From the NCBI GenBank assembly GCA_002104905.1, contig MCFE01000037.1:62001-126000 (forward strand): 64,000 nt of DNA, written 5' to 3'. Position numbers and translations under genes: made by a program. The DNA comes from Basidiobolus meristosporus CBS 931.73. Its lineage: Eukaryota; Fungi; Basidiobolomycota. The notes under the pieces are model-generated. The model saw only the letters and a program-made list of their open reading frames with translations. It had not been told where the DNA came from and searched no databases. Positions 677-62,155 of the stretch are shown here, in pieces; the stretch's first letter is position 1, and the number at the start of each line of letters is the position of its first letter.

Positions 677-3225
677 TTACAACTTGAGGGATTTCAAAAG
701 CTGGGTACAAACATCCTTGTACTCCCACGGATGTCCACTCAACCGGCTGAACCTTATCCCGTGAAGCCCAAGAAGCAACGCAACCTTTACAATTGTTATT
801 TGGAAGCACAAAACCCCCTCTTCACCTCGGACGACCTCAGCGATCGGTTCGTCGCCCTCATCCTCAGAGGTACTTTCATCCGAGAACGACCCCGACTCCC
901 TCCTCTCGTCGGAGCAGCGGTCTGGGCTTGGTGTGGCATCAGAATTGTCGGGAAACAGCGCAGACTTGTGGCCCCGCAGTCCAAGCCGGGAACTCCAGTT
1001 CCGCTGTGGCTCTGGTGAGAGTAGAGTTTTGTTGGGTTCGTGTTTGCGATTTAAACGCCTGTTAGGCTTGTAGATGCATTCAAAGTATCCTTTTCCTTCG
1101 CGCCATTCAATCCCCAGCGCGTCTAAGGATTTTACGATATTCAACCGTATGGCGGCTGGCTTTTTGGTAGTAGTGGTCGTCACAGAAAACAGTCCTTTGA
1201 GGAATACCGGCCTGATGTACGCATCAGCGGTGCAGCTCGGACTCTGCGGCGGTGTTTGTCTCTGGGACTCGGTGGGTGCACCGGTTAGCAGTATGGTTGG
1301 TAAAGGCTCTTGGTGTTGAGCTGGCTCGGGACATACTTCGGCATCGTCCTGGCGCTTGGACTGCGAGGTATGCATGGATTTACTGCGTGACACGGCATCG
1401 TTGGATGATTTTTCGCTTTTGGATTTCTGGCTACCATACCTTCCCATTGCGGGTCGGAGGGCTTGGCTGATGCGACGAAAGACTTTCCCGGAACTGGACT
1501 CTGGTTGGATGACGCCGGTTAGTGATTAGTGCTGAGGTGCTTGAGAATTCCATGGTGTTACCTGAGAAGGATTTTTTGATTTTTCGGATTGAATCCTTGC
1601 GCTTTTCGGCTGGGGGCGGCGTTAGGTGTTGGCTCTGGGGCACAACGACCGGAGCTTGCACTTTTTCGCGATCCATCTTCTCCTGCACCAGGTAATAAAT
1701 GGATAGAAGGGGGTGGCGGAAGTGATCGTGCTGTTCCTTATATGCTTCACTCTCCAAGACACCCTCCAGCTGAGCCCGAATACTCTCTTCACCACCAAAC
1801 TCGAATCCGGCCATCCGTTTGATCACATCACCATCCAATGGTGATGCAAGTGGCTTACGTTGAGGAACATGACTCTCGACAGGGCTTTCATAGTCAATAT
1901 TCATCCACGGGTGCTGAATGATCTCATCCATTGTTGCTCGCTCTGAGGGATCGGCCACCAGTATTCTAGATAAGAGACTCTTGCACTCTGTTATGTGGTC
2001 AGACAACGGGTAACACAAAACAGTCGATCGAAAGGGTGGACTTACCACAACTGAGCCAATCAGGGTACTCGACATGGGCCTTTTTGATTTTTGCATGAAG
2101 AGTCGGCATATTGGCGCCTTCAAAAGGAACTCTTCCACACACCAGAACATACAGAACAATCCCCATGCTCCATATGTCTATCTCCGGGCCCGTGTAAGCC
2201 CGCGAATGGAGTAGCTCCGGAGCAGCAAAGTACAAGGACCCGCAGAACGTCGACAGTTGAGAGCACGGCGAATACAGATTGGAGAGGCCGAAGTCGATGA
2301 TTTTTATGGAGCCGTCGGTATCGATCAAGATGTTTTCGATCTTGAGATCTGGTCGAAGAAAATCCTTGTTAGTCCATGATCAGTTGCTCAAGCCAACTAA
2401 AACGCACCTCTGTGCACGACCGAATTCTTATGGCAATAATCTGCATGAAAATTGTGATTAGCTCGGATGCTGGTGCTGATACCGATACCAATGCCGATGC
2501 CGATGCCGATGCCGGTTCTCTCTGATTGTACTTACCTAGCGCAGAGCAGATTTGTCTGGCGAACTCACGCGCCTTCTCCTCTTTCAGTTTCCCGTGGCTG
2601 ATGATGTAATCCAAGAGCTGGCCACCATTGATGTACTCGAGAAAAAGGTAGTAATGCGTTGGTTGGATCATGATGTCGGTCAGCTTCGCGATGTTAGGGT
2701 GATGCAACAGCGACATTATTGCGGCTTCACGAACGATTCGAACTTCCCTATTGTCATCCTTCTTTCGATTCCTGGAGTCGTCGTTCGCAGGCGGTGCACG
2801 TGATACAATCTTCACGGCAAACTGCCAAGGAAATCCCATTAGCCTATGAAAACGCGCAAAATCACAAACCACCACTTTACCTTGCTTCCAGAAGCATAGT
2901 GAACGCCCAGTTTCACTTTCCCCATTCCGCCAACCCCCAACGTCTTGGTCAGTCGGTAATTCCCTATGCACCTTTGACTGTACGAGCAATAACTTCTTTT
3001 CATAGCAGGGGTAGGGGTGTCACTGGGCTGTTTTCCAGCGGCTGGGTTATTAAGCGGCTGTTGGTGTGTAGATATATTGACAGGAGCGCCCACCATTTCA
3101 TAGGCGCTCTGCTCCTTACTAAAGGTTAGGTCACGGCATAATGAGTTGGGGGAAGTATAAAGCGGCTCAGTCGACTGCAGCAAAACGTCTACTTCAGGTA
3201 ATTGCAAAAACTTGAACTCGCCCAT
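677..3225 (-). CDS. KIN1: Kin1/Kin2 (MARK/Par-1 family) Ser/Thr kinase with C-terminal KA1 domain; 5 exons
   Basis: Motifs [39 protein letters not shown], and KA1-type C-terminus (FLKGLFSV...FQITIVKV...[19 protein letters not shown]). GT-AG introns at 2822-2880, 2441-2535, 1988-2045 and 1501-1561 join the ORF-track pieces in frame. First ATG at 3225 (the ORF-track start at 3255 is TTG). Confidence 0.92.
2475..2516. repeat. Imperfect hexamer microsatellite (GCCGAT)n, 7 units, inside Kin1 intron 2
   Basis: gctgat accgat accaat gccgat gccgat gccgat gccggt; it makes this intron 95 nt versus about 60 nt for the others. Confidence 0.85.
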
Positions 3226-4931: not shown

Positions 4932-6959
4932 CTACCAGATATTTACTCTTTCTGATTCGCTTCGGTACATCTTGTCACCTTGCTTGACACCGAAAGCGTC
5001 ATAAAATTCCTTGAAGTTGGACAAGGGTCCGTTCACTCTCCAGATCCCTGGCGCATGGGGATCGGTACGTAGACGATACAAGGCCTCTTCCTTGCGAACG
5101 ATGTTCTTCCAGACCTGGGCATACGCGGTGAAGAATTGCTGCTCGGGGGTGAGTCCATCGACGGTGCCAACCGCGCCAGGATTGTTCTTTTGCCATTCCT
5201 GGAAAGCAAGATAGGAGAGTTTCACTCCACCGATGTCGGCGATATTTTCCCCCTGGGTGAGATTCCCATTGACCTTGGAGCCGTACATGTCGTAGCTGCT
5301 GTACAGGTCGATCACCGTCTTCGCCCGCTTGTCGAACTCTTCCGCATCTTTCTTTGTCCACCAGTCTACGAGATTCCCTTGCACATTGTAGTTGCGGCCC
5401 TGGTCATCGTAGCCGTGGGTGATTTCGTGGCCAATGACTGCGCCGATGCCTCCGAAATTGTAAGCAGGCTTCCCCTTGGGGTTCTTCTCGTCGGGTGCGT
5501 AGAAGAATGGTGGCTGCAAGATGCCGGCAGGGAAGGCAATGTCGTTGAAGTCCGGAGCGTAATAGGCGTTCACCTCGTATGCGGTCATGAACCATTTGGA
5601 TTTGTCAGTCGGCGCGTTCGCAGCCTTGAGAACGTCCCTAAAGTTCGCCAGGGATGCACGGAGAACGTTCGAGATGAACGGACGGTAGCGGGATACCTTG
5701 ATATGGGAGTAATCCTCCCACTTGTCGGGGTAGCCAATCTTGACATTCAGTCCCTTCAACTTCTCCACCGCTTTCTTGCGGGTCTCGGGACTCATCCAGT
5801 CGATGGTTTCAAGTCGGGTCTCCAGTGCCTTCTGGATGAACTGAACCATTTCCAGGGCCTGTGCCTTCGCCTCAGGCTTGAACTTGTCCTTGACAAACAG
5901 TTGACTGACGGTATCGGGGATTTGAGATCCTATCTCTCGAAGGAGGAACTTCCAACGAGGGGTAGGCTGATCTTGTCCTCGAAGGGTACGGCCAAAGAAG
6001 TCAAAGTCTTGCGACTTGAATCTTTCGTCGAGGTAGGCTGCGCTTGAACCCAACACCTGCCACTCCAGGTACACTCGCCAATCTTCAGGGCGGAACTTCT
6101 GGAACAGCTTGTTGAAGAACTTGAAGAAGTTGGGATTGTCGATGATGACGTCTCCATCTCCGAAGCAGTGTCCCTTGTGCCAGCCCAACGATTGGCAGTA
6201 GGAATACCAAGGGAAGGATGGGGTGATGGAGCGAAGCTGCTTGAAGGAGAGCTTGTTGTAGACACGGTGGACATCGCGAAGCTCAACGGAGGAGAGGGAA
6301 TTCTCCGCCAGCGCAGTTTCGAAATCCAACACCGTCTTCGCCCTCGCTTTGCCGTTCTTCGCTCTAGCCAAAGTGAAGATCTTCTCGATATGGGTGAGGT
6401 ACTTCTGGCGGGTTTCGGCCTGCCCCGCCTCGATGTAGTAATCCTTGTTGGGGAGAGAAAGTCCGCTTTGTCCCATGTAGGATAAGCTCCAAGTGGAATT
6501 CTTGCTATCGGGTTGAGAGCCGAAAGCGAACAGTGGACTGCCTCCATGAACCGAGATAGATAGACTGTGGAGCTTACCGAGTACCTTGGCGACATCATCA
6601 GGGTTGCGAACTGTTCCAGCCTGGCGCAGTAAACCTCTGATAGGGGCTAGTCCAGCCTTTGCGATGAGGCGGGTATTCATACCTGAAGCGTAGAAGTCGC
6701 CCAATAGAGTGGAGGTGGAAGCGTTTCCAGCCTTCTCCAGAGTTGTCAGTAAGAACTCGGAGTTCTCCTGGTTAAGGACGGAGAAGGTGTTCCAAATGGA
6801 TTGGTCCTCAGGGATTTTGGTGGATTTTATCCAGTCGTAATTGGCATGGAAGTAGAAGTCCTCGGTTGCCGAAGGAGCCTGTGATGGGAGGTCCTGGGCG
6901 CAGATGGAGTTGCCAGTGATGGCCAGGGAAAGCGCAAGAAGACTAGCCACTTTTCTCAT
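4932..6959 (-). CDS. Secreted M13-family (neprilysin/PepO-like) zinc metalloendopeptidase, 675 aa, intronless
   Basis: VNAYY, FPAGILQPPFF, GHEITHGYDD (HExxH), GENIADIGG, DPHAPGIWRVNGPLSN. ATG at 6959 is followed by a signal-peptide-like MRKVASLLALSLAITGNSICAQ. Confidence 0.95.
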   Translation of the reverse strand: MRKVASLLALSLAITGNSICAQDLPSQAPSATEDFYFHANYDWIKSTKIPEDQSIWNTFSVLNQENSEFLLTTLEKAGNASTSTLLGDFYASGMNTRLIAKAGLAPIRGLLRQAGTVRNPDDVAKVLGKLHSLSISVHGGSPLFAFGSQPDSKNSTWSLSYMGQSGLSLPNKDYYIEAGQAETRQKYLTHIEKIFTLARAKNGKARAKTVLDFETALAENSLSSVELRDVHRVYNKLSFKQLRSITPSFPWYSYCQSLGWHKGHCFGDGDVIIDNPNFFKFFNKLFQKFRPEDWRVYLEWQVLGSSAAYLDERFKSQDFDFFGRTLRGQDQPTPRWKFLLREIGSQIPDTVSQLFVKDKFKPEAKAQALEMVQFIQKALETRLETIDWMSPETRKKAVEKLKGLNVKIGYPDKWEDYSHIKVSRYRPFISNVLRASLANFRDVLKAANAPTDKSKWFMTAYEVNAYYAPDFNDIAFPAGILQPPFFYAPDEKNPKGKPAYNFGGIGAVIGHEITHGYDDQGRNYNVQGNLVDWWTKKDAEEFDKRAKTVIDLYSSYDMYGSKVNGNLTQGENIADIGGVKLSYLAFQEWQKNNPGAVGTVDGLTPEQQFFTAYAQVWKNIVRKEEALYRLRTDPHAPGIWRVNGPLSNFKEFYDAFGVKQGDKMYRSESERVNIW

Positions 6960-7700
6960 GGTATAATGGATATTTTCTAGAGAGGATAAAGTTTTAAAAA
7001 GGGGCGGGCATAATTGATTATATAGGAATGGCAAGGATCATGTCTACCGCGCATATCATTACAGCGCCTGCCATAACTAGCCACAGGACGGAGTTGATTG
7101 GAAGGCTGGCGGCTGCAGGAGAAGTTACCCTACCAAGCGGTAACATACATCAATTAGCAAATGAAGGATATCGCGTGACCGTGATCATCACGTTGGGTTG
7201 AAATGGTGCAACACAGAGGAGCAGTCCAATTAAATCAGCAGTGTGGTCGACATGGATTGATATTCGTCATAAGATCATATGGGCCGTTACCCGGTCTCTT
7301 GATTCTGGCTACCCAAAGTTTCATGTTTGTTGACTGTTGTTCCTCACAAGTCTACCAAATGCGGTGACTGTTGTTACCCCACGGCTACCAGCATGGATTG
7401 ATTTGATGTCCGAATCGTACGTCCGGCGCACATTGAGTCGAGCATCATTACGTTTGCCATGACGAATCTTGTTTAAGATTGCGAAGTGTGCTAACTGCTA
7501 GCTTATCTTGATCCAACGGCTCCTATCGGCCAATGGACATCCCGGGTCAAAATGTATAGCCGCCAGAGGAGAGATTAGACAAAAAGGTAAGCAGATACTC
7601 TCGATTCAACCGAATGGCCCCACCGTAACCAAACCAATAGCGACCAGGATGGCTTCAATATAAATGTCCCACGGCAAGCTCGGGAAACGGTCTTCGGGCG

Positions 7701-11551: not shown

Positions 11552-12864
11552 GGGTTAAATGCGGGTCAAAGGGAGTTCAAACAAACGGGGGAGGTATTTA
11601 AAAAAGTGGAGGAGAATAAACCCGTAAGTAAGCAAGCTCTATTTTGTAAGAAGCACGGATCGTTTAGATATACGCTGTACTTCCAAACTAGAACTGGTCA
11701 GATAAAAAAAGTCGGGAACTCTTCAGATAGAAAGGGGCGAACTGTCGAGTAAACCAGGTATTTAAGAAAACACTAGAGGCACCTCCGGGGGACAGCTTGA
11801 GGTGCGGGTAAGCGAAGAACGAAACAGTAATCCAAGCGATTAGTTCGAAAGGTTGGTGAGACCAAGGCACCAGAGAGTATCGAGAACAAAGATTAGAAAG
11901 GAATGAGAAGCGTAAAATAAGATATCCAATAATCTCTTAATAATCTAGATGGATGATAAAATTCAAGAGCATGGTGGATAAACATTACGAAAATGCATAC
12001 AATGATCACAATGAATGTATCAGAATCGATAGCTCCATCGGTGAATTTACCTCAATATTACCTAACCTTGAGGTTTGGCCCAAAGATCTACCGATGATAA
12101 CTAATCACCAACACTCAATCAACAGGAGCATTGTGGAGCTGAGGCAACAGGGAACAACAGAATGCGAAGAATTTGCCGTGCTTTCTGTAACAATGATAAT
12201 AATCTATGGTGGGTGAGGCCAAGCATGATGCAGTTCTCACCAAACCCATGCTGCCATTGTTGTGAAGCCCACAAGAGTAAATTATCCAAATCCGGGAACA
12301 TCCATGGTTTCGGCCAAGGGTGACCATTCTAAAAATAACGCACTTTCGTTTCGGCCGGAAATGGAAATGGTCGAGTATTGGAATGTATTACTCATGTTAC
12401 CCAAACCATTCGCGATGCAGAAATGAAACGTTCAGAAAATGCAGTCCACGCATTGTCAACATTTGCCCCATAGTGCTCGGATATTTGTTGCATATCACAT
12501 TTGGACAATTCTATTTGGCTGTTTCGCTATTTCACTGAAGATGGCTAGATTTTAGAAACATGCACGTACGTGGCTCGGGTGTGGAGTGAATAGACAAGAT
12601 TCCTTGAGAGTTCAGACAGAAATCAATTTGCTTAATCAATCAGTTCAAATGTGATCAATCATTTCGCTTAAATATAACCAGTCTTCTCTAATGGCGGTTA
12701 AACCCAGTCCAAAATGTGACCAATTGGATTGAAGTTGGTTCCTATAGGCCAATTTTAATTTACTCTTGCAATTCTCTAGTCCAAAGTGTAAACAAAGGGT
12801 TCCCTCCCGCGCTGGCTCCTGTTTTATGCCCAATTTGTAAACGAGAGAGTGGAGCCAACATTCG

Positions 12865-15596
12865 ATGAATCACCAAGTTAGGGAGTCTATACTGGCCCCG
12901 TTAGGAAGATGTTTCGATACTCTCAATATCAAGGTACCACCGAAGTGAGGTCGTCTTTTGTCTCGGAGAACTCACAGTTTTCGCGTTTCGTTAAGGATTT
13001 TGAGATCGGAAGACTGCTAGGAACAGGCGCTTTTGGGCATGTCTACAAAGCAGTCGGAAAGGCTGGCCCATATGAAGGCAGGGTAGTTGCCATAAAAATG
13101 GTGGGTTGTGATCGCCGTAGTATGAACGTAGCTTGTCGCGTGACTAACCGCCAGTCTCTAGATCAACAAATCCAAGCTGACCGAAGACCTTCGAAGACGC
13201 GTTGTTAACGAAGTTGAGATACAATGGCAACTGCAGCATCCCTCTATACTGGAATTATATGACTATTCCGAGGACGAGGACACGGTCTATCTCGTCATGG
13301 AAATCTGTACTGGTGGCGAGCTTTATCGCTATTTGAAAGAGAGAAAACGGCCATTGACCGAATCGGAGGCAAGATGTGTCATGCGACAACTGGTAGACGG
13401 CTTACTCTACATGCACTCGAATGGAATCATGCACCGTGACCTCAAGCTTTCGAACATACTGCTTACAGACGAATATCATATAGTAAGGGCGAAGCCAAAT
13501 ATCTTTCTATTTATATCGCTTTTCTAAGGCTTCATGTTATGCACTGGTTTACTTGATCCAGAAAATTGGTGATTTTGGTTTAGCGACAAAAGTCAATGGT
13601 AGAGAGGGTGAGCAGAAAACCATGTGTGGGACACCCAACTATATATCCCCGTAAGTATGGATCGGCCCTAGAATCACGATAAGGTGCTTACCTTTGTATA
13701 CTCCAGGGAGATCATTTCGCGGCAACCCTATGGATTTGCGTCGGATATATGGTCTTTAGGGTGTATCTTGTTCACATTTTTGGCTGGAAAGCCTCCATTT
13801 GAGGTATGTAGTGTTCCAGTACCCAGTTCGCATCAGCCATATATGTGGAGCTAAGCGCCTCCCCAACAGAGCCAGAAAGTACGAAGTACCCTGGACAAAG
13901 TGACCAGAGGGGATTACACATTGCCAACTGGTCTCTCCACCGAAGCTCAAGATTTAATCCGACGACTGCTTCAGATAGTAAGAGAGCCAAACATCCCAAG
14001 GTTCACCAACCTTTAACCTAACCCGCCTTTTCAGCAACCTCGCCACAGAATACCTCTGGGCCAAATCCTGCTTCATCCATTTCTCAATCCCTCCCTCCCT
14101 ACACAATCACTGCAGAGATTGACCGCACCGGGCATCAAGCCCACTGGCAGCAGCCCTCTAGCAAGTCCTGCCAACTACCTAGAGGCCAGAGTCCCACAAG
14201 CCTCCGCGAAGACCGAAGAAGCATACACACGATACACAAAAGGTAAATACCAATTCCAAATGGAGCATGCATGGAAAGCCTATGCTCAACAGTGCACAGA
14301 AGAAAAAAGCCCACCCAAGACCTCTACGCTACAACCAATCAACACAGAACGGCTGAAGCCGATCAAACAAAAGACGAAGCATGGCACTATCGAGTTGCTC
14401 TCTTCAGGAACCATCATACTAGACCTGGACGGGGAGAAAACCATCATGGCCATCAGCAAATCTGGTGAACAGGTAGGTTAGCCACGCTCACCTCCTACCC
14501 AGGCGCTTCTCAATGACCTTCTCTCCCCGTAGGTTCACTTCTTTGAGAAAAAGCCCAGCTATCTGCCCCAGGACCACTTGACAGTCCCCGTCAAATCCTT
14601 TTCCCTGCGTTCGCTGCCCGACAAGTACAAGAGTCGGTATCGCTACGTGTTCCGATTTGTCGATCTGATCCGATCCAAAACACCCAAGGTCGGTTGGCCC
14701 TCAGACCTCGATCGTTGATGCGATGGATACTAACCTCGCCTCTGCTGCCAGATCATCTTCTATTCCCCACAAGCCAAGTGCATCCTGATGGAGAACGGGC
14801 CGTTGGCTGACTTCGAGATGGATTTCTATGATGGGATCAAGGTGCACAACGCGGCGTCCCGTGGGCTCCTGCAGATCAAGAATGCCCAAGACGAATACAC
14901 TTTTGATACCAACTCCAATGCCAAATTCGTGATACCCACCAACCTGAAGCCCATCTTTTGCCACATCCAGGAGTGTCTGAAGGCGTGTCTGGATATCGAG
15001 CGAAACAACAAGCACGCCTCCGACTATCCCATCGTGATCAGCCATTCGGAAACCAGCTCCACGCTGAAGAAGACGGAGGAGGCTGATGAGAAGGCCCGAT
15101 TCCAGCTGTTCTCTGCGAAGCCCAGACTCGACGCAGACTTCAGCGAGGAGCTGAATCGGAAGTACGACCCTGGCAAGGGAAAGCACGTCTCGCCTGCCAT
15201 CCCACCAGGCAAGTTGGTGGCTACTGACAGAAGTACCAACAGTCAAGGCTCCTCGGGTGCGACAGGGGCGCCATCCCCCGAGCACATGCAGTTCATCCCC
15301 AATGTTGGCTGGTGCCAACGCTCCGGCAGCGGGGTCTTCCTGCTACTGTTCTTCGATGGCATTCAGATGGTGGTCGAGGCCAAGAACCAAGTGATTATCT
15401 GGTCCGACCACAACACGCCCTACGTGGAGCCTCAAAGGTTAGTACTGGTGAGCAAATGCAGAATGGCTCGGATCGAGTCTAACCAAGCCCCTTCTCCTCT
15501 AGATTGGCCATAGACAAGGATCTGCCCAAGGCCGTCAAGACCAAGCTGGCCTACCTGCCCAAGTTCATCGAGCGTTTCGAGTCCCGGCCATGTTAA
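12865..15596 (+). CDS. PLK4: Polo-like kinase 4 (Plk4/SAK): kinase domain, cryptic polo box (PB1-PB2) and PB3; 10 exons, about 720 aa
   Basis: Kinase: [35 protein letters not shown]1: [15 protein letters not shown]2: [51 protein letters not shown]3: FIPNVGWCQ...[11 protein letters not shown]...[12 protein letters not shown]. Nine GT-AG introns keep the frame (12934-12995, 13101-13161, 13483-13561, 13651-13706, 13804-13869, 13978-14034, 14473-14532, 14689-14751, 15438-15502). An alternative start at ATG 12909 is possible. Confidence 0.9.
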
Positions 15597-15715
15597 TATC
15601 TGTTAGCTGTAGATAGAGATGACCTGTACATTCTTATTTTGAGCGTTGTATATATCCTTGTAGAACCGTTTTGGATTAAAGCCTTTATTTCGAGGGCCAG
15701 GTGTACATGTGCTGA

Positions 15716-16434
15716 CTATGCTCCTTTGAGTTTGTATTTCGCATTCTCGAGCTCCCCCAGCTGCTGCTCCGATTCCCGGATCCATTTCAGGGCGATCGTT
15801 TGCACCCCGACCAGCAGTAGCGGCAGCCCCCATATCAACCAATCTTGCACCGAGTCTGGTCTCATCACTAGCACGGGGAGCAGCGAAACCCCCGAGTACG
15901 CCCAGTAGAAGCTGGCTGCAGGCTGGTCCAAATGTAGAATGTACAGGGAGAGTGAAAGGGAGGCGATGCACAAGAATATTGAGAACGGTACTGAGCTGGC
16001 CACGTATGGCTCATCTATGAGGTATATGTAATCTCGGACCGAGGTGTATCCTGAGTACAGATAGCTGTGAAAGGCCGAGCCGCTTTAGTGTCACTTTCGT
16101 TGAAGGTTCCCGATCCAGCGCGTACTTACAACGGTATCAGCGTAGAGGGCAGTATGTGCAATGCAATCTAAAGCGTGGTCAAATGGGCGGGTTTAGAGTT
16201 TGCTCAGTGCTTGTGGATGTTTATGGCCGGGGGATACTCACAAAGAAAAGCCCATTCGCCTGGTTGTTTTCTTTTCTTAGCTCCTCGATTAAGCGTTCTT
16301 GCTCTGTGCTAGAGAGGTTAGTAAACAAGCACACTCAAAATGCCTCTTCAGTTCCAATGCTCGCCTTCCTCATCCAGAAACTCCACAAAATCGTTGGTCT
16401 GTTTCCCTATGGTGTGGGCGTTTGATCGATGCAT
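15716..16434 (-). CDS. Small (172 aa) multi-pass membrane protein of unknown function with a KxKxx-type C-terminus; 4 exons
   Basis: Exons 16434-16365, 16303-16242, 16167-16130, 16064-15716 give MHRSN...FVEFLDEEEQERLIEELRKENNQANGLFF...ELENAKYKLKGA. Intron 1 (16304-16364) is GC-AG with a TACTAAC branch point. Confidence 0.75.
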
Positions 16435-17254
16435 TACAGTATTTGATGGCAACATATGATTTCCACTAGGTGTTTAATATTCCATATCATCTGATCTCCG
16501 GTATTCAAGTTTGGGCGCTTGCAGTCAACCTGCACTCTTGATTGGATTCTTGATGACCCAAATTAATTGGGCTGTCACTTGGAGGATGTCCGTTGTATTC
16601 CATATCCCTATAAAAAATATCTTACTTCGATATCGTGTGGTATTCTTCTGGAATTCTGCCGGTGTTCTGCTGGAGTTTTTCTGTCAACCTTCAGGTATGA
16701 AGATTTCTGGAATTAGTGAGCTGACTGATCCAATATTTGGCCTGAGGATTACCCAGTCACAATACTTTCTTGGACCCAAGTCTACTTATTCCCAAGAAGG
16801 CTGGTTTATGCCTGTATATATACATACATGCCTATGTATGTCGACAATATTTGGTCTGGCCACTTGTTCTTTGTATGTAATCCTTTACTTCTGCATCCTA
16901 GCAATTCAGGGGCTGAATTAATGGAAAGCTGCAATGAAACATGCAAATACATAATCAACTGCATAGCAATGGAAAATATCTTTCCTCATAACATCTGATG
17001 ACTAATCTCTGTGAGAAATCTCTTACTCAAGTCCATTTGATAATCTGCTGGCATTCTGATGGTATTTTGCTGACATATATCCTTAATCTTCCTTCAGACA
17101 TTAGTTGTAAATCTTTGTGAAAGTAGTGAGTAGCTTATTAACAAACTTGGCCTCCTCCAAGAGAGTATGTCTTCTTATCAGTCAAATAGCTGGAACCTAC
17201 AATAGAAATAGATACTGTTGTGAGCTTTGCAACTGCACCTAATTGTTAAGTATG

Positions 17255-18270: not shown

Positions 18271-21200
18271 AGAACAAAGTGCCTTTAACTGCATTTGCCT
18301 TAATGTTGAAGACAAATTGCTAAATCAATGCTCAAGGGCAAAATTGGCAAAGAATGCCTGGAAGGCATTAGAAGACACCTACCAGTCATGTTCAGTGGCT
18401 AAGAAAATGTATCTGAGACAAAAATTCTTTGCTACAAAGATGCAGCCAGGAGAAGAAATGAAAATCTAATTAACAGAATTACCCTGCAGGTAGATGAAAT
18501 GGAATCTGTGGGCATACCAACTACTGATGAGAATGTGATAGTTACTATCCTGAATAGCCTGACAGACAAGTTTCCGGGCCTTGTATCAGCCCTAGAGTCC
18601 AGAACTGAAGATTTGACCTTAAATTACATATATGGAAGGCTCCTGGATGAAGAATTAAGAAAATCAAGCACCAATAAGAAGGAAGCAGAAAATGCCTCAA
18701 TAAGCAATGATAACCAAGAAAGAAGGTACCCAAGACCTTACAAAGGCAACAGCAACCTGTTTTGCTACTACTGCAAGAGGAAAAGACACTCATCAGACTG
18801 ATGTCTCAAGAAGAGAGATAATCAGCATAAGAAGCCTGAATATGGAAATGCTGCAACAACTGAAGATAGACTATTCATATCTGCACTAAATATGACCACA
18901 AACAAGGATTCTCAGATGTGGTGTATTGACTCTGGAGCATCTCAACACTTTACACACCAAAAAGAACTCTTTACCCAATCTCAAGATATTCCAATCAAGA
19001 GGGTTTTCATTAGTGACAATAGAACACTTGATACAGTGGGAGAAGGAACTATCCAAGTAAACCTTACAAGTAGTGAAGGAAGCATACACTGAATTTTAAA
19101 GAAGTACTCTATGTATCAAAAATAGCCAAGAATCCACTATCTGTAAGCAATGCCACAGCAGAAGGACTCAGTTTCAGCTTTGACAATTCTGGATGCAGGA
19201 TCACTGATCAAAATGGTGCCCATATTGCTTTGGGTATCAGAGATCAGAATCTTTACAAGTTGACTTATATTCCATCATATCTGGAAGCCAATATAAGTAA
19301 CTTAAATGAAGAAACACCAATGCTTTGGCACAGGAGATTGGGACACATCAATTTTGATTATTTGCACAAAATGATCAAAGATCAGCTAATTTCTGGAGTA
19401 AAAATTGATCCCCCAGCTGATTTGGAGCACTGTGAAGCCTGCATATATAGGAAACAAGCCAGACAACTGTTCAAGAGCTCTGGATTAATCAAAATTAAGA
19501 AAAAATTTGATCTAATTCACTCAGATCTGTGTGGACCTATGCAAAAAAAATATATCCTTAGGCAGGATGAAGTATTTAATCACCTTGATTGATCATTAAA
19601 CAAGATACACATGGGTCTACTTTATGGGGAGAAAGGAAGAAGCTCTGTCCAAGTTCAGGGAGTTTAAGACCATGGTGGAGAGAGAAACTAATGTAAAGTT
19701 CAAGAAAATACGCTCTGACAATGGTGGAGAATATACCTCAAAACTCTTCATCCACTGCTGCAAAATTTGTGGGATAAAGCAAGATACTACTGTACCATAC
19801 TCCCCACAGCAAAATGAAGTAGCAGAACATGCAAGCAAATCAATAATTGATATGGCAAGATCTATGATCCATGATCAAAATATTATCCTATGATTTTGGG
19901 TGGAATCGGTTGCCACTGCTGTTAACCTTAAAAATAGGAGTTATAACACAATACTTAGTGATTCTGCTCCATTTGAGGCATGGTATAGATACAGACCAAG
20001 TGCAGAACAGTTAAGAATATTTGGGTGTACAGTATATGCCAAGAAACTGCGTGGAAATCAGCCAAAATTTGAGCTAAAAAGTGGAAAATGCATATTTTTG
20101 GGCTACTGCAGTGAGAGTAAAGCATATAGACTCTACAATACCAAAGCAAAGAAGCTTATTAAGTCCAGGGATGTGTTGTTTGATGAAAATGCAAGATTTT
20201 CACAAGAAATGACATCAGATGATGACAAAAATCTGGTCTCAAGTCCACCAATTGTTAGGATTGAATCAGAGCAAAACAATGAAAATTTTTTCACTCCAGA
20301 GGACTCTACAACCATAGTTCAGCCTGAAGCAGTGCCTAGGAATATCCCAGAAGTGATCATTCCAGTATCAAATTCCCAGAGATCCAATCAGACAAGAAAT
20401 AGCCCAAATTACTATATCAATGAGGGAACAAACTTAGCCCATGCCTATTCAGTCCATATTGATGAACCCCAGACTATAAAAGAGGCCTTAAATAGCCCCC
20501 AGACAAAGTTTTGGAGATCTGCAATGACTGAGGAATATCATGCCATGATGGAAAATCAAACTTGGAACTTAGTTAAATTACCAATCAACCAAAAATCAAT
20601 TGGATGCAGATGGGTCTTCAAGACAAAATACAAGCCTGGTGGTACAATTGAAGGATACAAAGCAAGACTTGTGGCCAAAGGATACTCTCAAACAAAAGGA
20701 CTTGACCATACTAAGATCTTTGCACAGGTAGCCAAGTTTAATCATATTAATATTGGCTATTGCAGCCAAATATAGTTTTTTACTCATCAAATGGATGTAA
20801 AAACTGCATTTTCAAATGGAAAACTTGATGAGGACATGTATATGGACCAGCCTGATGGGTTTGTTGATCACAATAACCCCCCATTTGGTCTGCAAGCTTA
20901 AAAAGTATCTATACGGTCTCAAACAATCACCAGGAGCCTGGAATTGCAAGATAGATTCTTATTTGGAATCTTTGAGTTTCAAAAGGAGTAATGCTGACTA
21001 TAGTATATACTATAAGCCAGATAGAGCAAATCCAGCACTATTAGCTCTATATGTGGATGATCTTATTATAGCCACCAATAATCTAGCAACATTGGAAGGG
21101 ACTAAATCCAGCCTTTCTAAGGAGTTCAAGATGTCTGATCTAGGAGAGCTCAGTTACTACTTAGGGATTAAGTTCTCCATAGACAGAAGTAACTAGACCA

Positions 21201-61270: not shown

Positions 61271-62155
61271 ATGAATTACTCATCTGAATGGTCTTTTCTC
61301 ATCAATTCCATCACTACCACTGGATTTCCTTTTGACACACTAGAGGAGATCTATTTCACGTACTGTGGACCATCAACCCCAATCTACTCAAGGAGATCCC
61401 TTGTTAAGCTTCTCTGCTATTACAAGAACTATTGCCCCACAAGGTTTCATCCCACCATCCATGGCAACAAAAGTCCTAGAAGCTTTCATTCCCAGCTGAC
61501 AGCAATGGAGAACCACCTTGCAGAGTGTATGAATGACTTGGAGCAAGCTTGGAATACTAGGTTCAGAAGCTCCAATAGACTTCCATATCCCAGAGTGTTC
61601 AGCAACAGGCTTCATATCAGGAGTATTTTGGATACCTTCCCAGTGAGGATTAACAGACCTTCTAGAGGGCAGAGGCACTTTTATTCTGACAAGTACAAGG
61701 CACACTGTGTGAAGTTTCAAGCACTGTCTGACATTGAGGGTAACATCATCTGGTTAAGTGGGCCATTTGCTGGAAGTAGGCATGACAAAGCACTCTGGGT
61801 AGAGAATTATCCTGAATTCAGTAGAGGGGAGAAATGTATGGCAGACTTAGTCTATGTAGGAGAGGATTGTCACAGATTAGGATGTATTACAGCTTATACA
61901 AAGCCAAGGAATGGTGTGCTTAGCAGGAAGCAGAAGCTCTACAATGAGATATTTAATCATTTCAGAGTGAGGGTAGAGCACACACTTGGATATCTGAAGA
62001 GATTCAGCATATTGGCAGGTAAATACAGAGGAAAGACATATATAGGAGAAAACAGCAGAATAGGTAAAATAGTTAAGATACTTATTAATGCACAGTATTC
62101 TCATACAAGAAGACATCCACTGAGAGAAATGTTTCTGGAGCATTATGAAGAGTAA
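61271..62155 (+). CDS. DDE_Tnp_4 (IS5/PIF/Harbinger-type) transposase, 294 aa, uninterrupted
   Basis: ILDTFPV (D), YSDKYKAHCVKFQ, GSRHD, MADLVYVG (D), NHFRVRVEHTLGYLKRF (E). Confidence 0.88.
   Translation: MNYSSEWSFLINSITTTGFPFDTLEEIYFTYCGPSTPIYSRRSLVKLLCYYKNYCPTRFHPTIHGNKSPRSFHSQLTAMENHLAECMNDLEQAWNTRFRSSNRLPYPRVFSNRLHIRSILDTFPVRINRPSRGQRHFYSDKYKAHCVKFQALSDIEGNIIWLSGPFAGSRHDKALWVENYPEFSRGEKCMADLVYVGEDCHRLGCITAYTKPRNGVLSRKQKLYNEIFNHFRVRVEHTLGYLKRFSILAGKYRGKTYIGENSRIGKIVKILINAQYSHTRRHPLREMFLEHYEE

What the first reader, a model, noticed from the sequence alone, without database searches (positions are those of the whole stretch)
12865..15596. Complete Plk4, the centriole-duplication kinase, in a fungal genome
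Seen: a spliced ~720-aa ORF with a kinase domain plus all three Plk4-type polo boxes, recognised by motif. Established: Plk4 drives centriole biogenesis, and yeasts and filamentous Dikarya, which use spindle pole bodies, lack it; among fungi it is expected mainly in flagellated lineages. Inference: if this genome is a non-flagellated zygomycete-grade fungus, it retains part of the centriole pathway. Basidiobolus is my unverified guess, and it is reported to have a microtubule-ring nucleus-associated organelle. Plk4 could be building that centriole remnant or have been repurposed.
Basis: partly seen in the sequence, partly recalled or inferred. Interest (0 to 1): 0.75.

Follow-up and report, generated by a model that had tools for sequence, protein, structure and literature searches.

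The report
Intact Plk4 kinase gene in Basidiobolus
Basidiobolus meristosporus, a fungus with no swimming cells, carries a complete and well-conserved gene for Plk4, the kinase that starts new centrioles in animals; the public annotation cuts it in half, and the gene offers a way to test whether the microtubule-bearing body beside this fungus's nucleus is a leftover centriole.

Summary
Window 12909-15596 (+) holds a 9-exon gene, or 10 exons if a 57-nt in-frame segment is spliced. It encodes a 726-aa (or 707-aa) kinase with a Plk4-type kinase domain, the cryptic polo box (PB1+PB2) and a C-terminal PB3.

The deposited gene model stops in intron 6, giving 417 aa. It misses most of PB1 and all of PB2 and PB3.

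The B. ranarum orthologue is 74% identical and shares the intron positions. All four domains are 81-87% identical while synonymous sites are saturated, which indicates purifying selection. In a tree the protein sits with fungal Plk4, not animal Plk4.

The case is not unique. Plk4 homologues with PB1 and PB2 also occur in five other non-flagellated fungi: Calcarisporiella, Massospora, Smittium, Syncephalis and Ambispora.

This scan noted STIL-like, SAS-4, CEP120 and CCDC77-like genes on other DNA of this genome, but had no Plk4 note.

No paper in the library links Basidiobolus with PLK4. This is a new member of a known kind, of moderate to high interest.

The parts
12909..13100 (+). Exon 1: start codon, N-terminal tail, and the start of the kinase domain (GTGAFG glycine loop; VAIK lysine K63 at 13095-13097)
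   Evidence: The public model P0381 uses the same ATG.
13162..13482 (+). Exon 2: kinase core, including HRD (D157 at 13438-13440)
   Evidence: Pfam Pkinase E 9e-30. Best solved-structure match is human PLK4 at 118 bits; the next family scores 79. Exon length of 321 nt is the same in B. ranarum.
13562..13650 (+). Exon 3: DFG (D175) and the activation loop with the conserved threonine (T191, [13 protein letters not shown])
   Evidence: The 89-nt exon is shared with B. ranarum.
13707..13803 (+). Exon 4: kinase C-lobe
   Evidence: Pfam Pkinase E 3e-9. The 97-nt exon is shared with B. ranarum.
13870..13977 (+). Exon 5: kinase C-lobe
   Evidence: The 108-nt exon is shared with B. ranarum.
14035..14472 (+). 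Exon 6: end of the kinase domain (to 14082), short linker L1 with no DSG degron, and the start of PB1 ([14 protein letters not shown], from 14332)
   Evidence: Pfam Plk4_PB1 profile positions 1-37. No D[ST]Gxx[ST] motif is present. The public model reads on from here into intron 6 and stops at TAG 14479-14481.
14243..14299 (+). Possible additional in-frame intron inside exon 6 (57 nt, GTAAAT..CACAG). Spliced gives 707 aa; retained gives 726 aa.
   Evidence: B. ranarum has an intron at the same place and phase, G|AA of the EEK motif. The public B. meristosporus model retains the segment. There are no RNA data, so this is unresolved.
14533..14688 (+). Exon 7: the rest of PB1. No gene is called here in the public record.
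   Evidence: Pfam Plk4_PB1 profile positions 79-107. No gene is called over window 14482-16959. The 156-nt exon is shared with B. ranarum.
14752..15437 (+). Exon 8: PB2 (to about 15048), disordered linker L2, and the first two thirds of PB3 (from 15271). Not annotated publicly.
   Evidence: Pfam Plk4_PB2 E 2e-22. Human PLK4 cryptic-polo-box structures match at E 1e-9, and PB3 structures at E 0.03-0.14. An exhaustive HMMER search gave 140 hits; every hit that I identified by source name or Pfam is a Plk4-type protein, that is, it carries Plk4 polo boxes.
15503..15596 (+). Exon 9: the end of PB3 and the stop codon TAA (15594-15596). Not annotated publicly.
   Evidence: The PB3 profile matches PLK4 PB3 structures at E 5e-12. 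The 94-nt exon is shared with B. ranarum.

Best explanation
Shown: this is the Plk4 (SAK) orthologue of Basidiobolus meristosporus. It was inherited vertically from the flagellated ancestor of fungi and has been kept intact under purifying selection.

Its parts are:
- An active-looking kinase domain, with the glycine loop, VAIK lysine, HRD, DFG and activation-loop threonine all present.
- A short linker L1 without the animal DSG degron.
- The PB1-PB2 cryptic polo box.
- A disordered linker L2.
- PB3.

Inferred, at roughly 45-50%: it works as in animals and chytrids. The cryptic polo box would dimerise and dock the kinase on the microtubule-bearing nucleus-associated organelle. PB3 would bind a STIL/Ana2-like partner. 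The kinase would phosphorylate that partner to license one new copy of the organelle per cell cycle. On this reading the organelle is a reduced centriole derivative.

The docking receptor cannot be CEP152 or CEP192, because neither was detected in fungi in two published surveys.

My confidence in the identity of the gene is about 0.97. The figure given below is for the whole statement, including the inferred role.
For: Identity:
- Pfam finds Pkinase, Plk4_PB1 and Plk4_PB2, exon by exon.
- The window's own public product P0381 (exons 1-6) scores 295 bits against the human PLK4 kinase domain, 220 against PLK3 and 214 against PLK1.
- The PB3 profile matches PLK4 PB3 structures at E 5e-12, and the PLK2 polo-box domain only at E 0.9.
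- An AlphaFold model of the B. ranarum orthologue's C-terminal half (pLDDT 81.8) matches the human PLK4 cryptic polo box (TM 0.75-0.82, E 2e-16). It also matches PLK4 PB3 bound to the STIL coiled coil (TM 0.83, rmsd 1.8 A). The Plk1 polo-box domain reaches only TM 0.33.
- Catalytic motifs are intact.

Vertical descent:
- The animal/fungal split has SH-aLRT 100, with Basidiobolus on the fungal side.
- Intron positions are shared with B. ranarum, and so is the downstream neighbour gene.

Selection:
- dN is 0.06-0.09 in the four domains and 0.39-0.65 in the linkers, with dS saturated.
- The branch to Basidiobolus is about 0.86, similar to chytrids. Massospora is 4.66 and Smittium 3.87.

Organelle:
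- Its mitotic organelles incorporate microtubules (PMC6492006).

Unchecked leads: this scan noted STIL-like, SAS-4/CPAP, CEP120 and CCDC77-like genes elsewhere in this genome.
Against:
- I did not verify any partner gene (SAS-6, STIL, SAS-4).
- A 2026 survey of 184 fungal proteomes that included this assembly lists STIL, CPAP and CEP135 as specific to flagellated fungi, allowing one residual protein.
- The known docking partners CEP152 and CEP192 were not found in chytrids or yeasts (PMC6559791) and are listed without fungal homologues.
- Plk4 also survives in non-flagellated fungi for which I know of no microtubule ring (Calcarisporiella, Ambispora, Massospora).
- A kinase-less derivative with Plk4-type polo boxes exists in two basidiomycetes, so retention does not require a centriole-like body.
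Confidence: 0.5

Rival explanations
1. It is a real, functional Plk4, but repurposed. It would regulate an acentriolar microtubule-organising centre, spindle assembly or another cell-cycle step, with no structural link to a centriole remnant.
For: - Plk4 homologues with PB1 and PB2 occur in several other non-flagellated lineages: Calcarisporiella, Massospora, Smittium, Syncephalis and Ambispora.
- Two basidiomycetes keep a kinase-less protein with Plk4-type PB1, the start of PB2 and a PB3-like end (hhalign probability 99.65%).
- The animal degron and the CEP152/CEP192 receptors are missing in fungi.
Against: - The full three-polo-box architecture and the PB3 fold that binds STIL in animals are conserved at 81-87% identity between Basidiobolus species.
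- Basidiobolus is one of the few non-flagellated fungi with a microtubule-containing organelle beside the nucleus.
- Other centriole genes are reported by this scan in the same genome (unchecked).
Confidence: 0.35
2. It is a decaying or silent relic: an open reading frame that persists but is no longer expressed or needed.
For: - The deposited gene model is truncated at intron 6 and nothing is called over exons 7-9.
- No expression data could be obtained.
Against: - There is no frameshift or internal stop in 726 codons.
- All splice sites are canonical.
- Domains are conserved at dN 0.06-0.09 against saturated dS, while linkers diverge freely.
- Catalytic residues are intact.
Confidence: 0.05
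3. Basidiobolus has an undiscovered flagellated or centriole-bearing stage, and Plk4 serves ordinary basal bodies.
For: Several centriole-related genes are reported by this scan in the genome (unchecked), together with one possible dynein-assembly relic (unchecked).
Against: - The literature describes the genus as non-flagellated and without centrioles.
- A survey that included this assembly found 210 flagellar orthogroups confined to flagellated phyla.
Confidence: 0.03
4. It is not a native fungal Plk4. It would be a Plk1/Cdc5-type kinase, contamination, or a recent transfer from an animal host.
For: Basidiobolus lives in animal guts and is known for horizontally acquired genes. The neighbouring M13 peptidase has its closest non-Basidiobolus relatives in Plasmodiophora (42%) and in Bacteroidota.
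Against: - The PLK4 kinase match beats PLK1-3 by 74 bits or more.
- No Plk1-type polo-box domain is found by Pfam or by fold.
- The animal/fungal split is supported at 100, with this protein on the fungal side.
- The animal DSG degron is absent, as in all 27 fungal homologues checked.
- The short introns and the flanking gene are shared with B. ranarum.
Confidence: 0.02

Closest known systems
Animal PLK4 / SAK (human PLK4, Drosophila SAK)
   Same: - Same order of parts: kinase, linker, PB1-PB2 cryptic polo box, linker, PB3.
- The kinase domain is the best solved-structure match, at 295 bits.
- The folds match: cryptic polo box at TM 0.75-0.82 (human) and 0.70-0.73 (fly), and PB3 at TM 0.83.
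   Different: - Linker L1 is about 80 aa, much shorter than in the animal proteins (my reading of the alignments).
- It lacks the DSGxxT degron that follows the kinase domain in all 7 animal sequences checked.
- The receptors CEP152 and CEP192 were not detected in fungi.
- The host has no canonical centriole.
Chytrid and other zoosporic-fungal Plk4 (for example Spizellomyces punctatus 'PLK/SAK protein kinase' XP_016604502.1; Synchytrium, Batrachochytrium)
   Same: - These are the closest relatives outside the genus, at 44-49% identity over the kinase domain through PB2 in the closest chytrids.
- Same domain set.
- They also lack the DSG degron.
- They lie on the same side of the tree.
   Different: Those fungi make flagellated zoospores with true centrioles. 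Basidiobolus does not.
Basidiobolus ranarum K7432_013372 (696 aa; 'hypothetical protein'; UniRef name 'Polo kinase')
   Same: - Orthologue at 74% identity.
- Intron positions and the downstream neighbour gene are shared.
   Different: - It is annotated at full length, whereas the B. meristosporus entry ('Pkinase-domain-containing protein', 417 aa) is truncated.
- It has one extra N-terminal intron.
C. elegans ZYG-1
   Same: A kinase with a cryptic polo box that starts centriole assembly. The fold match is TM 0.61.
   Different: It is far more divergent, at 15% identity in the aligned cryptic polo box. The Basidiobolus protein is much closer to canonical Plk4.
Plk1 / Cdc5
   Same: Related kinase domain (214 bits). 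Polo-box folds are distantly related.
   Different: Neither exon 8 nor exon 9 gives a Pfam POLO_box match. The fold match is only TM 0.33 with rmsd above 12 A. The PB3 profile matches the PLK2 polo-box domain only at E 0.9.

Membership tests
Plk4/SAK | N-terminal Ser/Thr kinase domain of the polo-like group, closest to PLK4, with intact catalytic motifs | tested here: met
   Pkinase is found on exons 1-4. P0381 scores 295 bits against human PLK4, 220 against PLK3 and 214 against PLK1. GTGAFG, VAIK K63, HRD D157, DFG D175 and activation-loop T191 are all present.
Plk4/SAK | Cryptic polo box: tandem PB1 + PB2 | tested here: met
   Plk4_PB1 scores 28.2 and 27.6 bits on exons 6 and 7 (cut-off 26.4). 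Plk4_PB2 scores 80.3 bits on exon 8. The orthologue's model matches human PLK4 cryptic-polo-box structures at TM 0.75-0.82.
Plk4/SAK | A single C-terminal polo box (PB3) | tested here: met
   A profile of 17 fungal C-termini matches PLK4 PB3 structures 5lhy, 2n19, 4yyp and 1mby at E 5e-12 over the whole domain. The fold match to 5lhz is TM 0.83, rmsd 1.8 A. The window's PB3 is 87% identical to the B. ranarum one that was used.
Plk4/SAK | Orthology shown by a tree that includes the paralogues Plk1-3/Cdc5 | tested here: inconclusive
   The tree was built of Plk4 homologues only (46 rows; quick search, the careful search did not finish). I had no Plk1-3 sequences with a reference. The score margin and the Plk4-only domains stand in for this test.
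Plk4/SAK | Function: initiates centriole or basal-body assembly by binding and phosphorylating STIL/Ana2 | not testable with these tools
   This needs localisation, genetics or binding assays.
Animal-type PLK4 regulation (not a defining feature of the family) | DSGxxT beta-TrCP/Slimb phosphodegron just after the kinase domain | tested here: not met
   The motif is absent from the window's protein and from the 27 fungal homologues at that position. It is present at residues 241-295 in all 7 animal sequences checked.
Plk1/Cdc5 | C-terminal polo-box domain made of two canonical POLO_box repeats | tested here: not met
   No exon gives a PF00659 match at E <= 0.1. Foldseek gives TM 0.33 and rmsd above 12 A to Plk1 and Cdc5 polo-box domains.

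The most novel reading that the evidence does not exclude
The centriole-duplication module outlived the flagellum in terrestrial fungi. In Basidiobolus, Plk4 (with STIL-like and SAS-4-like partners) would build and copy the microtubule-ring organelle beside the nucleus, making that organelle a living intermediate between centriole and spindle pole body. Patchy survival of Plk4 in Zoopagomycota and Mucoromycota, and of a kinase-less polo-box derivative in some Basidiomycota, would then trace how the spindle pole body replaced the centriole.
Probability: 0.35. Interest if true: 0.8.

Novelty: new member of a known kind. Interest (0 to 1): 0.6.

Why it matters

Here a culturable, non-flagellated fungus keeps a full Plk4 under purifying selection. 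At least five other non-flagellated lineages keep homologues.

Electron microscopists have long asked whether the microtubule-bearing organelles of Basidiobolus and Coemansia are degenerate centrioles. PMC6070874 says of the Coemansia ring structure that its 'molecular composition ... is not known yet'. Plk4 is a specific molecular marker with which to answer this.

The finding also shows that a truncated public gene model can hide such genes from proteome-based surveys.

Tried and rejected
Readings rejected:
- Plk1/Cdc5 identity, on scores, domains and fold.
- Animal contamination or recent transfer, on the tree, introns and synteny.
- An alternative 50-nt acceptor for the optional intron in exon 6. 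It shifts the frame and destroys PB1 (my reading).
- An N-terminal intron like that of B. ranarum. The only GT..AG candidate in exon 1 is 44 nt long and breaks the frame.

Steps that led nowhere:
- Pfam POLO_box did not match PB3 on the split exons. A profile search settled it instead.
- The 'careful' tree search did not finish in two 300-s runs, so the quick tree is reported.
- Paper searches for Basidiobolus with PLK4 and with 'nucleus-associated organelle' found nothing.
- PMC12258516 is not held.
- The scan's notes hold nothing under 'flagellum' or 'cartwheel', and nothing on delta- or epsilon-tubulin.
- Pfam found nothing on the conserved neighbour gene.

Joined model: in search tools the spliced model was searched exon by exon, by reference. 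For longer stretches I used public protein ids (P0381 for exons 1-6, and the orthologue P0284). I joined the exons only inside local scripts, built from window.fa, to compare them with proteins already fetched. No database search was run with the joined 726-aa sequence; that step was left out.
Full report
What is there

The stretch 12700-15800 contains a plus-strand gene that starts at ATG 12909 and ends at TAA 15594-15596. I read nine exons: 12909-13100, 13162-13482, 13562-13650, 13707-13803, 13870-13977, 14035-14472, 14533-14688, 14752-15437 and 15503-15596. A script confirmed that the eight introns are all GT..AG and 56-79 nt long. It also confirmed that the joined frame is open for 726 codons with a single terminal stop.

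Pfam was run exon by exon, by reference:
- Pkinase on exons 1-4.
- Plk4_PB1 split between exon 6 (profile positions 1-37, 28.2 bits) and exon 7 (positions 79-107, 27.6 bits).
- Plk4_PB2 on exon 8 (80.3 bits, E 2e-22).

The catalytic motifs are intact: GTGAFG, VAIK with K63, HRD with D157, DFG with D175, and the activation-loop threonine in [13 protein letters not shown].

Which organism, and how the public record treats the gene

The neighbouring single-exon M13 peptidase ORF finds its own product at 100% identity. Next come B. ranarum proteins at 87% and 80%, and named B. meristosporus CBS 931.73 paralogues at 72% and 68%. Looking that product up places the window on MCFE01000037.1 (204,377 bp) of GCA_002104905.1. 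A published assembly table lists that accession as Basidiobolus meristosporus CBS 931.73, Zoopagomycota (PMC13358043 supplement).

In that record the gene call at this locus spans window 12909-14481 and gives 417 aa. It is named 'Pkinase-domain-containing protein [Basidiobolus meristosporus CBS 931.73]' (P0381). Its sequence equals my exons 1-6 plus two residues read into intron 6, up to TAG 14479-14481. No gene is called over window 14482-16959. The deposited annotation therefore lacks most of PB1 and all of PB2 and PB3.

Support for the full-length model

B. ranarum has an annotated 696-aa protein with Pkinase, PB1 and PB2: K7432_013372, 'hypothetical protein', UniRef name 'Polo kinase' (P0284). 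It aligns to my model at 74% identity (521 of 704) from residue 28 to the last residue, and it bridges every exon junction.

Its gene (L002 625-3358) has 11 exons. The exon lengths 321, 89, 97, 108, 156, 683 and 94 nt match the window's 321, 89, 97, 108, 156, 686 and 94 nt.

B. ranarum has one more intron inside the equivalent of exon 6, in the same phase, before the EEK motif. The window has a matching GTAAAT..CACAG segment at 14243-14299. It is 57 nt long, in frame and free of stops. It is probably an intron, which would give 707 aa, but the public model retains it, which gives 726 aa. Only RNA data can decide this.

The gene downstream on the minus strand (window about 15716-16413) is also conserved with B. 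ranarum's neighbour: tblastx gives 80% identity over 119 residues. It too is uncalled in the public record.

Is it Plk4 rather than another polo kinase?

- Exon 2 alone scores 118 bits against human PLK4. The next family scores 79 and PLK1 scores 73.
- The whole kinase domain (P0381) scores 295 bits against PLK4, 220 against PLK3, 214 against PLK1, 208 against PLK2 and 197 against Aurora.
- Exon 8 matches human PLK4 cryptic-polo-box structures at E 1e-9. It matches PB3 structures weakly, at E 0.03-0.14.
- A profile of 17 fungal C-termini (A1) matches the PLK4 PB3 structures 5lhy, 2n19, 4yyp and 1mby at E 5e-12 over the full domain. It matches the PLK2 polo-box domain only at E 0.9.
- I folded the C-terminal half of the B. 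ranarum orthologue, P0284:332-696, whose domains are 81-87% identical to the window's. The AlphaFold model has mean pLDDT 81.8. It shows three polo-box modules and a disordered linker.
- Foldseek ranks the human PLK4 cryptic polo box first (TM 0.75-0.82, E 2e-16). Next come the fly cryptic polo box (0.70-0.73) and ZYG-1 (0.61). PLK4 PB3 bound to the STIL coiled coil matches at TM 0.83 and rmsd 1.8 A. Plk1 and Cdc5 polo-box domains reach only TM about 0.3, with rmsd above 12 A.

Formal paralogue phylogeny therefore remains to be done.

Origin and selection

An exhaustive HMMER search with exon 8 gave 140 hits and none above 50% identity. The named ones are:
- chytrids, Blastocladiomycota and aphelids;
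- animals;
- the non-flagellated fungi Calcarisporiella thermophila, Massospora cicadina, Smittium simulii, Syncephalis plumigaleata and Ambispora leptoticha.

Pfam confirms Plk4-type polo boxes in all five non-flagellated fungi. PB1 of Smittium falls below the curated cut-off.

I built a tree of 46 Plk4 homologues on 762 columns, using quick IQ-TREE with LG+C20+F+G4. Short fragments and most animal sequences were left out, there is no Plk1-3 outgroup, and the careful search did not finish. The tree splits animals from fungi with SH-aLRT 100. It pairs the two Basidiobolus proteins (99) on the fungal side, outside the chytrid clade (88), and leaves them unresolved among the other early lineages.

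The path to Basidiobolus is short, about 0.86. Massospora is at 4.66 and Smittium at 3.87.

Between the two Basidiobolus species:

| Region | dN |
|---|---|
| Kinase domain | 0.08 |
| PB1 | 0.08 |
| PB2 | 0.09 |
| PB3 | 0.06 |
| Linker L1 | 0.39 |
| Linker L2 | 0.65 |

Synonymous sites are saturated: dS is 2.3-3.6 or not computable. This is the pattern of a gene whose four domains are all in use.

One difference from animals stands out. The DSGxxT degron that follows the kinase domain in all seven animal sequences checked is absent at that position from this protein and from all 27 fungal homologues checked.

How it most likely works

In animals, active PLK4 recruits and phosphorylates STIL, which recruits SAS-6 and starts a centriole (PMC6070874).

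[quoted passage not shown] Its mitotic organelles incorporate microtubules but are not centrioles (PMC6492006). From my own memory of the older electron-microscopy literature, which I did not check here, the body is a ring of about 11-12 singlet microtubules.

The best-supported reading is that Plk4 licenses duplication of this organelle through a PB3-STIL-like interaction. I put this at roughly 45-50%.

The main rival, at about 35%, is a role at an acentriolar organising centre or elsewhere in the cell cycle. It is supported by three things:
- Plk4 is retained in lineages with no known microtubule ring.
- CEP152 and CEP192 were not found in chytrids or yeasts and are listed without fungal homologues.
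- Two basidiomycetes carry a kinase-less protein with Plk4-type polo boxes.

Earlier notes of this scan report STIL-like, SAS-4/CPAP, CEP120 and CCDC77-like genes on other pieces of this genome. I could not check them, and none concerned Plk4.

What is known already

No paper in the library contains both Basidiobolus and PLK4.

[quoted passage not shown] They also state that centriole-biogenesis proteins were not found in fungi other than chytrids.

A 2026 survey of 184 fungal proteomes, which included this assembly, marks its PLK4 orthogroup in a supplementary table as not specific to flagellated fungi. STIL, CPAP and CEP135 are marked as specific. PLK4 is never mentioned in the main text.

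So the gene family is known, and the B. ranarum protein sits unnamed in the databases. The complete B. meristosporus gene, its selection pattern and its relevance to the nucleus-associated organelle appear to be undescribed.

Limits

- In search tools the spliced model was searched exon by exon. The exons were joined only inside local scripts. No database search was made with the joined sequence.
- I do not claim that Plk4 is absent from Mucorales, Mortierellales or most Dikarya, because only a minority of the representative hits were identified by name.

Noticed in passing
L003:5001-7079 (Amylostereum chailletii, GCA_022385825.1) and L004:5001-6981 (GCA_022160275.1): Two basidiomycete proteins, P0112 (636 aa) and P0114 (602 aa), are 39% identical to each other. 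Neither has a kinase domain. Both have a Plk4-type PB1, the start of PB2 and a PB3-like C-terminus. hhalign against the Plk4 C-terminal alignment gives probability 99.65% and E 5e-25. No kinase gene is called just upstream. This may be a Plk4 polo-box relic surviving in Dikarya.
   Followed up: partly
window 15716-16413 (-): An unannotated gene lies tail-to-tail with Plk4. It is conserved with B. ranarum's Plk4 neighbour (L002 3537-4268, Pfam PF27705 UCP010056 in the precomputed table); tblastx gives 80% identity over 119 residues. My Pfam copy found nothing on it. A faint PF27705 gene also lies 4 kb upstream of the basidiomycete protein P0114, which may be chance.
   Followed up: partly
window 4932-7034 (-): An intron-free M13 metallopeptidase has several Basidiobolus paralogues. 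Its next-closest relatives are Plasmodiophora (42%) and Bacteroidota such as Pontibacter (about 41%). This fits the bacterial gene acquisitions reported for Basidiobolus.
   Followed up: partly
window 677-2716 (-): An ORF with a C-terminal KA1 domain (677-1447) lies directly downstream of a 357-aa kinase gene call (1431-2716). The public record calls only a 55-aa product inside the KA1 region. This may be another split or truncated model, of a MARK/Kin1-type kinase.
   Followed up: no
window 16000-64000: GC content falls from about 0.50 to 0.37-0.43 downstream of the Plk4 locus, and long ORFs are few. A Ty1/copia-type fragment (SH3_retrovirus + RVT_2) lies at 19900-20775. A DDE_Tnp_4 (Harbinger-type) transposase lies at 61271-62155; this scan has already noted it.
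   Followed up: no
proteins P0131 (Massospora cicadina) and P0134 (Smittium simulii): The Plk4 homologues of these two non-flagellated fungi sit on very long branches (4.66 and 3.87, against about 0.86 for Basidiobolus). This suggests relaxed or changed constraint there, unlike in Basidiobolus.
   Followed up: partly
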